A stretch of 63,343 nt of DNA, counting the filler, from Octopus bimaculoides (Eukaryota), in the NCBI RefSeq assembly GCF_001194135.2. It is 5 parts of 5 records of this genome, joined end to end, with 100 filler letters (N's around TTAATTAATTAA, not from the genome) between each part and the next. Parts side by side here need not be neighbours in the genome. Positions count along the whole stretch, not along the records: positions 17,733 to 49,507 come from NC_069000.1; 4 more parts are not named here. One strand, given 5' to 3'. The position numbers and the translations under genes were made by a program. The first letter of the stretch is position 1, and each line of letters starts with the position of its first letter. The notes under the pieces were generated by a model. It did no database searches. It was not told the DNA's origin and was given only the letters and a program-made list of their open reading frames with translations. This document shows, one piece after another, positions 24,312 through 27,389 of this stretch.

Positions 24312-27059
24312 TTACTTCTCGTTAGTCGATTCTTCGTTCGACGATCCCTCAACTGGCGATCCCTCGACTGGTGATCCTTCGACTGGCGATTCCAAGTCCG
24401 GCAATTCCGAGTCTGACAATTCCAAGTTCAGCAATTCTGGCAATTCCTCGTCCGACGATTCCAAGTCCAGCAATTCTGGCAATTCCTCGTCCGACGATTC
24501 CAAGTCCGGCATTGCCAAGTCCGGCATTTCCTCGACCGGCAATTCCACGAAAGGCAATTCCACGAACGGCAATTCCACGAACGGCAATTCTAAGTTCNNN
24601 NNNNNNNNNNNNNNNNNNNNNNNNNNNNNNNNNNNNNNNNNNNNNNNNNNNNNNNNNNNNNNNNNNNNNNNNNNNNNNNNNNNNNNNNNNNNNNNNNNNN
24701 NNNNNNNNNNNNNNNNNNNNNNNNNNNNNNNNNNNNNNNNNNNNNNNNNNNNNNNNNNNNNNNNNNNNNNNNNNNNNNNNNNNNNNNNNNNNNNNNNNNN
24801 NNNNNNNNNNNNNNNNNNNNNNNNNNNNNNNNNNNNNNNNNNNNNNNNNNNNNNNNNNNNNNNNNNNNNNNNNNNNNNNNNNNNNNNNNNNNNNNNNNNN
24901 NNNNNNNNNNNNNNNNNNNNNNNNNNNNNNNNNNNNNNNNNNNNNNNNNNNNNNNNNNNNNNNNNNNNNNNNNNNNNNNNNNNCTGAGATTGTACACTGT
25001 TAGAGGTTCCCCCATATTCAGCCTGATAGAAACCCTGTTCTCTATTTGTATTGTGAAGATCCTCCCTCACTGAATCCCTCACATGATCGCTTGCTAGCGA
25101 GTCACCGTGACATGCGCTTGCTAACATCGGGTCATGATGCAACTCGCTTGTCGACGTACTGTAAGACGGCCTGTTTATTGACGAACTGGCTCTCTGTCCA
25201 CTTGTTAGTGATTTTTGAGATTGCATACTTCCCATCATGTGCGACTTGCCGCATGCCCAACAGAATCTGGACTGATCGCTTGCTAGCGAGTCACCATGAC
25301 ATGCGCTTGCTAACATCGGGTCATGATGCAACTCGCTTGTCGACGTACTGTAAGACGGCCTGTTTATTGACGAACTGGCTCTCTGTCCACTTGTTAGTGA
25401 TTTTTGAGATTGCATACTTCCCATCATGTGCGACTTGCCGCATGCCCAACAGAATCTGGACTGATTATTTTTGCTTGCAGAACAGGTATGTGGTACTCCA
25501 CGAACAGAACTTACACAGTGTAATCTGTTCCTTGGCTGCATGTGATGAAACCTATTTATCGACACACTGAATGCCTGTCTAGTTGTACACATAGCTCTGG
25601 TCTGGTTCGATGCACTTAGAGACGTGGTCTCGGTTTGAACACCAACAGATCTCAAATCAGTTTGTGTACCTACAGATCTCCTTTGGATCCGTTCTATTCC
25701 TGCCGATCTAAAATGCCCATCAAGTAACTGGATAAAAAAATATAGTTCTTCTATCACTCTATCGTGATATCTGTTTAAATATCTTAAGTATCGTCTGTCC
25801 ATTAGCATTGTATTGTTCAATCTGTCCGTCGATGCACTGCGTGTGTGGCTGTTCATTGATGCATCAGAATTTTGTTCGTTCAGTGTTGAGCCGTAAGATC
25901 GAGCATTCAAAGCTATTCTAGGATGATATCGCCTCGCCGATGTGCTAGAAGTCTGAGAGAAATATAAGGGGTTATAGAACTGAAGGTTCACAGGGGCGCT
26001 TTCCCTTCTACTATCTAGCGAGTACCCACTTCTCTTCTGTGGTAGGCTGCAACGTCTCCCTCTAACACGCGTGCATCCAGTACCTTCATTCATTTCCGCG
26101 ATTCTAACTTTTTTGCTCACTCGTGAGAAATTACTTTTCCCGCGCATCGGCGCGCTTCCACGCACCTGTGCGCTTCCACGCATTCCGCGCATTAGCGCGC
26201 TTCCACTCTTTCCGCGCACTGGCGTGCTTCCACGCATTCCGCGCACTGGCGCGCTTCCACGCATTCCGTGCACTGGTGCGCTTCCACGCATTCCGTGCAC
26301 TGGTGCGCTTCCCCGCATTCCGCGTACTGGCCGTCTTCCCCGCATACTGCACACAGGCAGTCTTCCCTGCGTTCCGTGAACTGGCCGTCTTCCACGCATT
26401 CTGCGTTCAGGAGCGTTTAGACGTTTCCTGGGTACCGGCACGCTTTCGCTTTCTCTTTTCTCACTTTCTCGTGTGCTAGAAGCCTGGTTGCTATCTGGCA
26501 CTGTGTGGCGCGTTTCTATCATGATCATGCTGGAAGGTGAAGTTTTGCACTCTGTTTGAGGTGGCAACTTTATTTTTTCTGATCTTAGCGTCTCTTCAAT
26601 TTCTGGTCCGAGCTGCAGACGAAGAACTTGACTTGTTGAGAAATTATGAAGTCCATAGGGTTCTAGGCTTTTAGACATACTGGAACGTGGCATGCTGCTC
26701 CTTGGTATATTAGCTTCAGGTGGTAGTCTTGGTGTACTTGGTTCGTGCACCGATTCAGTTTCGACGAGCTTCTCTGGAGAATTAAACGTGTCGTCACCAG
26801 CTCCATGCCTCTTTGTACTGTGTGAAAGATCGGTTGGCTCAATACATTTTTTCTTTTTGGGACTAACTGTGGAACGTCTACATGGTGAATGGTGTTTTCC
26901 TTTAACTTTTGAGTCCTGAGATGAGACAGCCACTGGATTAGGACCTGAAGTTGAGCCAAGTGGGCAAGTGTCCCCGATTTTCGATGTAGAAAGTCTAGAA
27001 ATATCTTCATTATCATTCGAATGGAAATCAGTATCATGTTCATTTTCTGAAGAACTCAT
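24312..27059 (-). CDS. Uncharacterised intrinsically disordered, repeat-built protein (~915 aa if the 386-N gap is correctly sized): NLS, RG repeats, tandem TQT motifs, 63-aa duplication, acidic tail
   Basis: About 2.1 kb of stop-free sequence before the gap in an otherwise AT-rich, stop-dense window; higher GC; ATG in AAAA-ATG-A context; all internal repeat periods (15, 27, 39, 189 bp) are multiples of 3. No known family recognised. Confidence 0.7.
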   Translation of the reverse strand: MSSSENEHDTDFHSNDNEDISRLSTSKIGDTCPLGSTSGPNPVAVSSQDSKVKGKHHSPCRRSTVSPKKKKCIEPTDLSHSTKRHGAGDDTFNSPEKLVETESVHEPSTPRLPPEANIPRSSMPRSSMSKSLEPYGLHNFSTSQVLRLQLGPEIEETLRSEKIKLPPQTECKTSPSSMIMIETRHTVPDSNQASSTRESEKRESESVPVPRKRLNAPERRMRGRRPVHGTQGRLPVCSMRGRRPVRGMRGSAPVHGMRGSAPVHGMRGSAPVRGMRGSTPVRGKSGSALMRGMRGSAQVRGSAPMRGKSNFSRVSKKVRIAEMNEGTGCTRVRGRRCSLPQKRSGYSLDSRRESAPVNLQFYNPLYFSQTSSTSARRYHPRIALNARSYGSTLNEQNSDASMNSHTRSASTDRLNNTMLMDRRYLRYLNRYHDRVIEELYFFIQLLDGHFRSAGIERIQRRSVGTQTDLRSVGVQTETTSLSASNQTRAMCTTRQAFSVSINRFHHMQPRNRLHCVSSVRGVPHTCSASKNNQSRFCWACGKSHMMGSMQSQKSLTSGQRASSSINRPSYSTSTSELHHDPMLASACHGDSLASDQSRFCWACGKSHMMGSMQSQKSLTSGQRASSSINRPSYSTSTSELHHDPMLASACHGDSLASDHVRDSVREDLHNTNREQGFYQAEYGGTSNSVQSQXXXXXXXXXXXXXXXXXXXXXXXXXXXXXXXXXXXXXXXXXXXXXXXXXXXXXXXXXXXXXXXXXXXXXXXXXXXXXXXXXXXXXXXXXXXXXXXXXXXXXXXXXXXXXXXXXXXXXXXXXXXXXXXXXNLELPFVELPFVELPFVELPVEEMPDLAMPDLESSDEELPELLDLESSDEELPELLNLELSDSELPDLESPVEGSPVEGSPVEGSSNEESTNEK
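25084..25465 (-). repeat. In-frame 189-bp tandem duplication within the CDS
   Basis: Units start at 25084 and 25273; the only difference I found is a synonymous CAC/CAT His codon. Confidence 0.9.
26140..26400 (-). repeat. 27-bp coding minisatellite encoding (R/H)GMRGSAPV-type units
   Basis: Recurring + strand unit GCGCTTCCACGCATTCCG(C/T)GCACTGG. Confidence 0.9.
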
Positions 27060-27341
27060 TTTTTGAAAAAGCTTCTCACAGATGATTTTGGTGACGGATT
27101 GGTTTTCTAAGATTCCAGTAACCAAGTTAAGTGAACTAAACTTGCTTAAAAATAAATGGTAATAAATAATTTCTGGAGCTCTCGCTTCGGACACAGGTAA
27201 GGTTTTATCGCAATAAAAACGTTTATCGAAGAATACACGGACGACACACTATGTTGCTCAATACATTAATAATTCAACCGTTGAATGATGGTCTAAATTG
27301 GATGAAATGCGTGAAGATTTCGATAGGCAATACATTCTTAC

Positions 27342-27389
27342 CTCCGTAAATGAAATGCGACGTATATATCATACATATACATGTAGAAA
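27342..27389 (-). promoter_or_regulatory. Candidate 48-nt 5' UTR exon of the orphan gene
   Basis: On the minus strand: acceptor CTATTTCACTCTCTCACGTTTTACAG| (intron ends 27390) and donor GGAG|GTAAGA (intron starts 27341). A downstream acceptor CTTAAC...TCTTAG| ends at 27107, 47 nt upstream of the ATG. Confidence 0.5.

What the first reader, a model, noticed from the sequence alone, without database searches (positions are those of the whole stretch)
24312..27389. Orphan single-coding-exon gene built from stacked tandem-repeat modules
Seen: the only long ORF in 63 kb, GC-enriched, with a candidate 48-nt 5' UTR exon (27389-27342, strong AG and GTAAGA sites), a branchpoint-like CTTAAC before the 27107 acceptor, an A-rich Kozak ATG at 27059 and AATAAA about 150 nt after the stop. 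Module order: Ser/acidic N-terminus; SPKKKK NLS overlapping a CDK-type site; RG array; a short predicted helix (RRYLRYLNRYHDRVIEELYFFIQLLDGHF); two TQT motifs; a duplicated CxxC module; gap; acidic repeats. There are no TIRs, LTRs, RT or transposase nearby. Inference: a lineage-specific, fast-evolving nuclear intrinsically disordered scaffold or condensate protein, possibly germline. No family was recognised.
Basis: partly seen in the sequence, partly recalled or inferred. Interest (0 to 1): 0.75.

Follow-up and report, generated by a model that had tools for sequence, protein, structure and literature searches.

The report
Octopus-only disordered repeat protein gene
This is a real protein-coding gene known so far only from octopuses, encoding a mostly unstructured protein with variable basic and acidic repeat arrays and a conserved predicted docking site for the dynein light chain LC8; it is uncharacterised rather than a new kind of system.

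Summary
The ORF is real. From ATG 27059 to the gap at 24983, 692 codons are open in one frame only. The syntenic Octopus vulgaris locus has one uninterrupted 862-codon ORF.

Substitutions accumulate about as fast as in the flanks (89% vs 90-91% identity). Still, all 7 coding indels are multiples of three against 2 of 20 in the flanks (p=4e-5). Only 0.06% of neutral simulations keep the ORF. dN/dS is 0.55-0.70.

A profile search of 1.84 billion representative proteins found only the two octopod sequences it was built from, and Pfam gave nothing above cut-off. AlphaFold2 predicts disorder (mean pLDDT 39) apart from one 32-residue helix.

Nine residues after that helix lie RSVGTQTD and RSVGVQTE. 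Both score like validated LC8/DYNLL binders. The second sits in one of the two longest invariant runs across three species.

The RG array (2.9/9.3/15.2 units) and the acidic array (0/≥14.9/28.4 units) grow together across species.

Most likely it is a taxon-restricted, LC8-dimerised, charge-block disordered scaffold. Nuclear, condensate and germline roles, the 5'UTR intron and transcription remain untested.

The parts
24984..27059 (-). CDS part 1: ATG (27059-27057) to the gap edge, 692 codons
   Evidence: Open in one frame only. Colinear with the O. vulgaris ORF L001 10001-12097, 89% nt identity, and all 7 indels are multiples of 3.
24598..24983 (.). Assembly gap inside the CDS, at the start of the acidic array
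   Evidence: Run of N. In O. vulgaris about 185 nt of open ORF lie between the aligned edges.
24312..24596 (-). CDS part 2: 94 codons of acidic repeats plus TAA (24314-24312)
   Evidence: This frame is the one orthologous to the O. vulgaris ORF. The stop lies in a different place in O. vulgaris.
26325..27059 (-). N-terminal Ser/acidic disordered region (aa 1-245) with conserved islands: NPNPVxVSS, PEKLVETExVHE (26742-26777), LGPxIxETLRSxKIxLP (26562-26612)
   Evidence: Three-species alignment. AF2 pLDDT is below 50 except for a short helix at aa 152-159. dN/dS 0.54.
26847..26864 (-). SPKKKK basic patch (NLS-like; S-P-K-K CDK-type site)
   Evidence: Read directly. The basic cluster is kept in all three species; the SP is lost in L002.
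26133..26405 (-). Basic RG array, units of about 9 aa (PVRGMRGSA), 27-nt period
   Evidence: TRF gives 9.3 copies here, 15.2 in O. vulgaris and 2.9 in L002. 15 RG, 0 RGG, and three tri-RG matches. O. vulgaris aa 201-400 carry net +51.
25701..25799 (-). Predicted amphipathic helix (aa 421-453, DRRYLRYLNRYHDRVIEELYFFIQLLDGHF)
   Evidence: The only long helix in the AF2 model, pLDDT 64-75. Hydrophobic a/d-like positions are kept in three species (read by eye).
25656..25679 (-). LC8-type motif 1, RSVGTQTD (aa 461-468)
   Evidence: 18.4 bits on a PSSM built from 79 validated binders, the 96th percentile of binders. It degenerates to RSEGTQTQ in O. vulgaris and KSEGSQTR in L002.
25620..25652 (-). 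LC8-type motif 2, RSVGVQTE, plus TTS (aa 470-480), invariant in three species
   Evidence: 14.4 bits, the 56th percentile of binders. 19 of 5000 shuffles reach it. It is one of the two longest invariant runs. The closest validated 8-mer is DLGAP1 QSVGVQVE.
25428..25547 (-). Cys/His cluster HHMQPRNRLHC...HxC...CWACG (aa 505-544)
   Evidence: HHMQPRNRLHC and CWxCG are conserved. Pfam gives only sub-threshold zinc-knuckle-like hits, best 19.6 bits against a cut-off of 28.5. AF2 confidence is low.
25084..25461 (-). 189-nt in-frame tandem duplication (63 codons, two copies, one mismatch) carrying the second CWACG
   Evidence: TRF and the repeat finder. Single copy in O. vulgaris and L002. It lies about 100 nt from the gap, so it is either a recent duplication or an assembly artefact.
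24342..24595 (-). Acidic E/D/L/P/S repeat array (15-nt and 39-nt periods), cut short by the gap
   Evidence: TRF gives at least 14.9 units here, 28.4 in O. vulgaris and none in L002. Net charge is -29 over 94 aa here and -56 over O. vulgaris aa 651-850.
27060..27106 (-). 5'UTR between the candidate acceptor and the ATG
   Evidence: A 1-nt indel against O. vulgaris at 27072, and indels in L002, show it is non-coding and support ATG 27059 as the start.
27107..27341 (-). Candidate 5'UTR intron (GTAAGA...TTAAC...TTAG)
   Evidence: The donor AGGTAAGAAT, the TTAAC and the acceptor TCTTAG|AAAACCAATCCGTC are invariant in three species. Splicing itself was not tested.
27342..27389 (-). Candidate 5'UTR exon
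Evidence: No transcript evidence was available.

Best explanation
This is a genuine protein-coding gene restricted, as far as the data reach, to octopods. Its coding sequence sits on a single exon.

The product is about 800-900 aa (862 aa in O. vulgaris) and almost entirely disordered. Short conserved peptide islands are embedded in a fast-evolving sequence. Two arrays change in copy number between species: a basic RG array, and a C-terminal acidic E/D/L/P array.

Proposed mechanism (inferred, not shown).
- The invariant RSVGVQTE motif, and in this species also the adjacent RSVGTQTD, lies just after a short amphipathic helix.
- It docks the dimeric hub protein LC8/DYNLL.
- LC8 clamps two chains in parallel and stabilises a dimer.
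- The opposite charge blocks (about +51 and -56 in O. vulgaris) then allow masking within one molecule or electrostatic association between molecules, possibly also with nucleic acid through the RG block. This is scaffold-like behaviour.

Sub-confidences.
- Real, constrained, taxon-restricted coding gene: about 0.9.
- LC8 client: about 0.45.
- Charge-block self-association or condensate behaviour, and nuclear location: about 0.25.
For: Shown.
- 692 codons open in one frame only.
- A syntenic, colinear, uninterrupted 862-codon ORF in O. vulgaris bridges the gap.
- 7 of 7 coding indels are multiples of three, against 2 of 20 in the flanks; Fisher p=4e-5.
- Neutral simulation at the observed divergence gives a mean of 8.2 stops, and only 0.06% of replicates keep the ORF.
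- dN/dS is 0.70 (p=0.022) against O. vulgaris, and 0.55-0.58 (p=5e-6) against the third species.
- A non-3n indel just upstream of the conserved ATG marks the start.
- No relatives beyond the two octopod sequences in 1.84e9 representatives. No Pfam family above cut-off.
- AF2 mean pLDDT is 39.3, with only helices at aa 152-159 and 422-453.

LC8 inference.
- RSVGTQTD scores 18.4 bits and RSVGVQTE 14.4 bits on a PSSM from 79 validated binders (96th and 56th percentile of binders, leave-one-out).
- Flank log-odds, binder against non-binder, are +5.4 and +5.2. The binder median is 3.7 and the non-binder median -2.8.
- 19 of 5000 shuffles reach 14.4 bits.
- The phage-display optimum is VSRGTQTE (PMC6607443). 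The validated DLGAP1 site is QSVGVQVE.
- RSVGVQTETTS is one of the two longest invariant runs in an alignment that is 51% invariant overall.
- The motif lies in predicted disorder, 8-17 residues after the helix.

Charge blocks and co-varying array sizes.
Against: - No transcript, protein or binding data could be reached. The only annotation is a model in O. vulgaris that splices out the middle.
- Nucleotide conservation of the CDS (89%) is no higher than that of the flanks (90-91%), and dN/dS is high, so constraint on most residues is weak.
- The third species carries a reproducible 4-nt deletion after CWPCG that truncates the ORF at 508 aa. The C-terminal third and the acidic array are therefore not universally needed.
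- TQT-type anchors often fail to bind LC8. The non-binder VSVSTQTA resembles these motifs.
- The two motifs are separated by only one residue. The shortest studied linker is 3 residues (PMC10046861).
- Motif 1 degenerates in the other species.
- The AF2 disorder call rests on a 3-sequence alignment.
Confidence: 0.6

Rival explanations
1. The true product is the short spliced form annotated in O. vulgaris (CAI9737817.1, 392 aa). In that model a 1410-nt in-frame intron removes the RG array, the helix, the xQT motifs and the CxxC cluster. The long ORF would then be mostly intron that happens to stay open.
For: The annotated model joins ...RRMRGRR to VQPQEPSS... through a canonical CG|GTCAGT...TTACAG|T pair. 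The acceptor is conserved in the window.
Against: - The removed segment holds all 7 frame-preserving indels.
- It has no stop in about 470 codons in two species.
- It contains both of the longest invariant peptide runs.
- The donor GT is GC in the window.
- L002 has no acidic exon to splice to.
- At most this is an alternative 'exitron' isoform alongside the full-length form.
Confidence: 0.12
2. It is a young or decaying ORF without protein function: for example a transcribed non-coding locus, or a de novo ORF drifting neutrally and kept open partly by stop-poor repeat composition.
For: - Coding identity equals flank identity.
- dN/dS is 0.7-1.0 or above in several sub-regions.
- Repeat arrays stay open in several frames.
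- The ORF is frameshifted in L002.
- No protein from the window's own species is in the protein collection.
Against: - The non-repeat 70% of the ORF is open in one frame only.
- 7 of 7 indels are multiples of three, against 2 of 20 in the flanks.
- Only 0.06% of neutral simulations stay open.
- dN is significantly below dS in both comparisons.
- The start codon is conserved, with frame-breaking indels just upstream.
Confidence: 0.1
3. It is a transposon-derived, viral or retro-copied ORF, either a dispersed multi-copy element or a recent insertion.
For: The coding region is intronless, and the neighbourhood is rich in SINE-like repeats and microsatellites.
Against: - Single copy at a syntenic position in O. 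vulgaris. The ORF matches only its orthologous interval within 22.6 kb + 31.8 kb.
- No terminal repeats flank it.
- No RT, transposase or capsid domain in it or in 10 flanking ORFs.
- No homologue anywhere else in 1.84e9 representatives.
Confidence: 0.03
4. It is a real gene whose conserved islands serve another purpose, with the xQT motif incidental. One candidate is a zinc-binding nucleic-acid-binding protein built on the HHMQPRNRLHC...CWxCG cluster and the RG array, for example a chromatin or RNA-granule protein.
For: - HHMQPRNRLHC is as invariant as the xQT block.
- CWxCG resembles a rubredoxin-type knuckle; Pfam PknG_rubred scores 19.6 bits, below its cut-off.
- The tri-RG definition is met.
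Against: - No Pfam match reaches threshold.
- One candidate Cys ligand (HTC) is Asp in L002, and the His after CxxC is Tyr in O. vulgaris.
- AF2 builds no fold there.
- This reading does not exclude LC8 binding.
Confidence: 0.15

Closest known systems
Octopus vulgaris hypothetical protein CAI9737817.1 / UniProt A0AA36BQ40 (chromosome OX597833.1, 51.86 Mb)
   Same: It is the orthologue. The locus is syntenic and colinear. Amino-acid identity is 82% over the N-terminal third, and the same module order is found in the underlying 862-codon ORF.
   Different: The deposited model is 392 aa and splices out 1410 nt. The genomic ORF has 15.2 RG units and 28.4 acidic units, and lacks the 189-nt duplication.
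Clients of LC8/DYNLL with paired, closely spaced motifs: Drosophila Panoramix, GKAP/DLGAP1, ASCIZ
   Same: - An 8-residue xQT motif in a disordered region, next to a helix or self-association element.
- Two adjacent sites.
- Panoramix is likewise poorly conserved, largely disordered and lineage-restricted, and is dimerised by LC8 (PMC7861614).
- DLGAP1 QSVGVQVE differs from RSVGVQTE at two positions.
   Different: - No sequence homology to any of them.
- Binding is untested.
- The linker is one residue, against 3 or more in the studied cases.
- Only one of the two sites is conserved.
RG/RGG-motif disordered proteins and charge-block (polyampholyte) scaffolds such as Ddx4 or nucleophosmin partners (named from general knowledge, not tested here)
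   Same: Tandem RG dipeptides meet the tri-RG spacing rule. Strongly segregated positive and negative blocks give a near-neutral whole protein.
   Different: There is no RGG triplet and no folded RNA-binding or helicase domain. The units are MRG/VRG rather than GRG. Phase separation, methylation and RNA binding are all untested.

Membership tests
LC8/DYNLL-binding client (TQT-anchored linear motif class) | 8-residue motif with a [T/V/I]-Q-[T/V] anchor and permissive flanks (H-bonding residue at -4, small residue at -2, strand-breaker D/E/P at +2, no Pro before the anchor) | tested here: met
   On a PSSM from the 79 validated binders of PMC6607443 Table S4, RSVGTQTD scores 18.4 bits and RSVGVQTE 14.4 bits. 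Flank log-odds are +5.4 and +5.2. 19 of 5000 shuffles reach 14.4 bits.
LC8/DYNLL-binding client (TQT-anchored linear motif class) | The motif lies in an intrinsically disordered segment | tested here: met
   AF2 pLDDT is below 50 from aa 454 onward, with no secondary structure. Caveat: the alignment has only 3 sequences.
LC8/DYNLL-binding client (TQT-anchored linear motif class) | The motif is conserved among orthologues | tested here: met
   Site 2 (RSVGVQTETTS) is invariant in three species. Site 1 degenerates.
LC8/DYNLL-binding client (TQT-anchored linear motif class) | Physical binding to the LC8 dimer, giving client dimerisation | not testable with these tools
   This needs ITC or pull-down, or a multimer model. 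Only window sequences could be submitted for structure prediction.
LC8/DYNLL-binding client (TQT-anchored linear motif class) | An adjacent self-association element (coiled coil), as is typical of clients | tested here: inconclusive
   A single helix at aa 422-453, pLDDT 64-75. The heptad-like hydrophobic spacing kept in three species was judged by eye. No oligomer prediction was possible.
Transposable element or viral ORF | Multiple dispersed copies | tested here: not met
   The ORF matches only its orthologous interval in L001, and nothing else in the window piece. No further relatives in the protein databases.
Transposable element or viral ORF | RT, transposase, integrase or capsid domains, or terminal repeats | tested here: not met
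   No Pfam hit above cut-off for the ORF or for 10 flanking ORFs. The inverted repeats found are microsatellite palindromes elsewhere in the piece.
Taxonomically restricted (orphan) protein-coding gene | No detectable homologue outside the clade | tested here: met
   A profile HMM against 1.84e9 representatives returned only P0001 and P0002. Non-octopod cephalopod genomes could not be searched by tblastn.
Taxonomically restricted (orphan) protein-coding gene | The ORF is maintained by selection within the clade | tested here: met
   Frame-preserving indels, the neutral simulation, and dN below dS. Exception: the frameshift in L002.
Taxonomically restricted (orphan) protein-coding gene | Transcribed and translated | not testable with these tools
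   Only an annotated O. vulgaris model exists. No RNA-derived contig was found.
RG/RGG-motif proteins (definition recalled from Thandapani et al. 2013, from memory) | Tri-RG: RG(X0-4)RG(X0-4)RG; or RGG boxes | tested here: met
   Three tri-RG regex matches, 15 RG, 0 RGG. Methylation and RNA binding were not testable.
Zinc knuckle / rubredoxin-like / zinc ribbon | A Pfam match at the gathering threshold, with four conserved metal ligands | tested here: not met
   The best match, PknG_rubred, scores 19.6 bits against a cut-off of 28.5. Ligand candidates vary between species.

The most novel reading that the evidence does not exclude
An octopod-specific adaptor protein that LC8 dimerises through an invariant VQT site. 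Its basic RG block and acidic tail have expanded together in the O. vulgaris / window-species lineage so as to keep the charge balanced. On this reading it would be a tunable, self-neutralising condensate or chromatin/RNA scaffold, functionally analogous to lineage-restricted LC8-dependent adaptors such as Drosophila Panoramix, but of independent origin.
Probability: 0.15. Interest if true: 0.65.

Novelty: new member of a known kind. Interest (0 to 1): 0.4.

Why it matters
The locus shows how coding status can be established for an orphan whose substitution rate looks neutral: the test used here is frame-preserving indels against the flanks.

It also corrects or extends the only existing annotation, the 392-aa O. 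vulgaris model. The constrained ORF is 862 codons long, and its most conserved blocks lie inside the annotated intron.

If LC8 binding holds, this would be a cephalopod-specific client of a universal hub protein. The paired growth of the two opposite-charge arrays would then offer a natural series (2.9/0, 9.3/≥14.9 and 15.2/28.4 units) for studying how charge-block disordered proteins evolve.

Otherwise it is one more uncharacterised lineage-specific gene.

Tried and rejected
- **Pfam on the ORF** gave only sub-threshold zinc-knuckle or collagen noise. Pfam on 10 flanking ORFs gave nothing.
- **PDB sequence search** with the helix and motif region found no match even at E=10.
- **Word-indexed protein searches.**
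  - The central 241 aa found nothing, not even the known relative P0001. Absence in that tool is therefore uninformative.
  - The N-terminal 245 aa found only P0002.
  - No protein from the window's own species turned up, so Logan contigs could not be used to close the gap or to test splicing.
- **Structure search** (fold search) was not run, because the AF2 model has no confident domain.
- **Literature look-ups** for SRR11869391, A0AA36BQ40 and CAI9737817 gave nothing. The species of L002 stays unknown.
- **tRNA scan** for SINE heads gave nothing.
- **Sub-regional dN/dS** has too few substitutions to localise constraint.
- **A coding extension upstream of ATG 27059** is rejected because of non-3n indels there.

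
Full report
**1. What is in the sequence**

- On the minus strand an ATG at 27059-27057 opens a reading frame of 692 codons, running to the edge of an assembly gap at 24984. The other two minus-strand frames are full of stops.
- In the piece 17733-49507 it is the only long ORF not made of N runs or TA/CA microsatellite. 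GC rises to 0.46-0.49 over it.
  - SPKKKK at 26847-26864;
  - a 27-nt-period RG array with 9.3 copies, 26156-26405;
  - the helix-forming stretch at aa 421-453;
  - RSVGTQTD and RSVGVQTE at aa 461-468 and 470-477, that is one TQT and one VQT;
  - a CWACG knuckle present twice, through a 189-nt in-frame tandem duplication with a single mismatch;
  - after the gap, an acidic array with 15-nt and 39-nt periods.

**2. The gap**

- As written, the frame runs through the 386 N. That count is only an estimate, and two of the three frames stay open after the gap, so the window alone cannot decide.
- A protein search found an Octopus vulgaris hypothetical protein (P0002 = CAI9737817.1 / A0AA36BQ40) and one Logan contig product, P0001.
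- The O. vulgaris locus (L001, OX597833.1) is colinear with the window over about 22 kb.
- It carries one uninterrupted ORF of 862 codons, 10001-12589. That ORF matches the window ORF module for module and runs from '...SVQPQ' directly into ELP/DLE acidic repeats.
- The nucleotide alignment puts both gap edges (24984 and 24591) on third codon positions of that ORF, and the repeat periods are multiples of three.
The missing stretch is about 185 nt in O. vulgaris.

**3. Is it a gene?**

- Coding nucleotide identity to O. vulgaris (89.0%) is no higher than in the 5' and 3' flanks (90-91%).
- All 7 indels in the CDS are multiples of three: 144, 3, 21, 9, 3, 162 and 3 nt. Only 2 of 20 indels in the flanks are (Fisher p=4e-5).
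- Neutral simulation at 11% divergence gives a mean of 8.2 stops. Only 0.06% of replicates stay open.
- Nei-Gojobori dN/dS:

| Comparison | dN/dS | Detail |
|---|---|---|
| Window vs O. vulgaris | 0.70 | dS 0.152, dN 0.106, p=0.022 |
| Window vs L002 | 0.55 | p=5e-6 |
| O. vulgaris vs L002 | 0.58 | not tested separately |

- A 1-nt indel at 27072, between the candidate acceptor and the conserved ATG, shows that the sequence upstream of the ATG is non-coding.
- Conclusion: this is a protein-coding gene under weak residue-level constraint but clear reading-frame constraint.

**4. The O. vulgaris annotation**

- The deposited 392-aa model removes 1410 nt in frame, through CG|GTCAGT...TTACAG|T.
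- That segment holds all seven frame-preserving indels and both of the longest invariant peptide runs.
- The donor is GC in the window.
- The full-length ORF is therefore the constrained product. The spliced form is at best an alternative isoform.

**5. The third species**

- L002 is a 2503-nt genomic-type contig. It contains the putative intron and both flanks, and the same contig is seen in 5 samples.
- It is 71-77% identical in nucleotides.
- It has only 2.9 degenerate RG units and no acidic array.
- It has a clean 4-nt deletion right after CWPCG, which ends the ORF at 508 aa. The shifted frame still stays open and homologous for 92 codons.
- The conserved core is therefore the N-terminus through to the Cys/His cluster.

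**6. Relatives and fold**

- A profile of the three sequences, searched with HMMER against 1.84 billion representatives, returned only its own members.
- Pfam gave nothing above cut-off, and the PDB sequence search gave nothing.
- AlphaFold2 gives mean pLDDT 39.3. The only structure is a helix at aa 152-159 and a helix at aa 422-453, the latter with pLDDT 64-75.
- The composition is Ser 16.5% and Arg 10.7%, and lies on the disordered side of the charge-hydropathy boundary.
- The ORF has no dispersed copies, no terminal repeats and no TE or viral domains.

**7. Mechanism**

*LC8 docking*
- Overall 51% of alignment columns are invariant. The two longest invariant runs are RSVGVQTETTS and HHMQPRNRLHC, 11 residues each.
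- The first is an LC8/DYNLL-type motif.
  - The literature describes an 8-residue beta-strand motif anchored by TQT. The residue at -4 forms H-bonds and the residue at +2 is a strand-breaker.
  - VSRGTQTE is the phage-display optimum (PMC6607443).
- On a PSSM built from that paper's 79 validated binders:

| Motif | Score (bits) | Percentile of binders | Flank log-odds |
|---|---|---|---|
| RSVGTQTD | 18.4 | 96th | +5.4 |
| RSVGVQTE | 14.4 | 56th | +5.2 |

  - The median flank log-odds is 3.7 for binders and -2.8 for non-binders.
  - 19 of 5000 shuffles of the protein reach 14.4 bits.
- The validated DLGAP1 site QSVGVQVE is nearly the same peptide.
- The motif lies in predicted disorder just after the only long helix. 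This is the usual arrangement for clients that LC8 dimerises. Paired sites in a disordered, lineage-restricted protein are documented for Drosophila Panoramix (PMC7861614).
- Caveats:
  - many TQT peptides do not bind LC8;
  - site 1 degenerates in the other species;
  - the linker here is one residue, against 3 in the shortest studied case (PMC10046861).

*Charge blocks*
- In the complete O. vulgaris protein, aa 201-400 carry +51 and aa 651-850 carry -56. The whole protein carries only -11.
- The two arrays grow together across species:

| Species | RG units | Acidic units |
|---|---|---|
| L002 | 2.9 | 0 |
| Window | 9.3 | at least 14.9 (cut short by the gap) |
| O. vulgaris | 15.2 | 28.4 |

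- This suggests compensatory charge balance, and electrostatic masking within a molecule or association between molecules. That is an inference only.

**8. Verdict**

- The interpretation as an orphan, fast-evolving, disordered protein is supported.
- Nuclear, condensate and germline roles, the 5'UTR intron and the poly(A) site remain untested.
- The gene is a new, uncharacterised member of a known kind: a taxon-restricted disordered repeat protein and a putative LC8 client.

Noticed in passing
window 25084-25272 and 25273-25461: A 189-nt in-frame tandem duplication with a single mismatch (25107 G vs 25296 A) lies about 100 nt from the assembly gap. It is absent from O. vulgaris and L002. It may be a very recent duplication or an assembly or haplotype artefact.
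   Followed up: partly
L002 about 1830-1850 (equivalent to window about 25430): A clean 4-nt deletion just after CWPCG frameshifts the ORF in the third octopod, and the same contig is seen in 5 samples. The shifted frame remains open and homologous for 92 codons, and this species has no acidic array.
   Followed up: partly
L001 10676-12085 (O. vulgaris): The deposited gene model CAI9737817.1 splices out 1410 nt in frame (GT-AG). That segment contains the most conserved peptide blocks. The donor is GC in the window.
   Followed up: yes
window 20118-20264, 22408-22555, 28136-28210, 39622-39768, 40006-40080; also 17751-17916, 18147-18312, 19052-19217, 45183-45348: Two families of short dispersed SINE-like repeats flank the gene and recur many times in the O. 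vulgaris locus. ARAGORN finds no intact tRNA in them.
   Followed up: partly
window 35416-37400, 43000-43420 and other stretches: Long TA/CA/TATG microsatellite-like arrays produce spurious 'YIYIYI' ORFs and border most of the assembly gaps (36727-36931, 37405-37702, 43417-44317, 46261-46464).
   Followed up: no
window 23834-24311 and 27060-27652: The 3' and 5' flanks of the gene are as conserved across the three octopods as the CDS. There are long invariant blocks, for example CTGAGAATCTTCCACTA and CTGACGAGTTGTTTT, which may be UTR or regulatory sequence.
   Followed up: partly
window 24256-24987 (+ strand): The acidic array is also open on the opposite strand, giving a GNSSSDDSKS-type repeat of 243 'codons' including N. 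This looks like a by-product of the stop-poor repeat rather than a second gene, and the same is seen in O. vulgaris.
   Followed up: no
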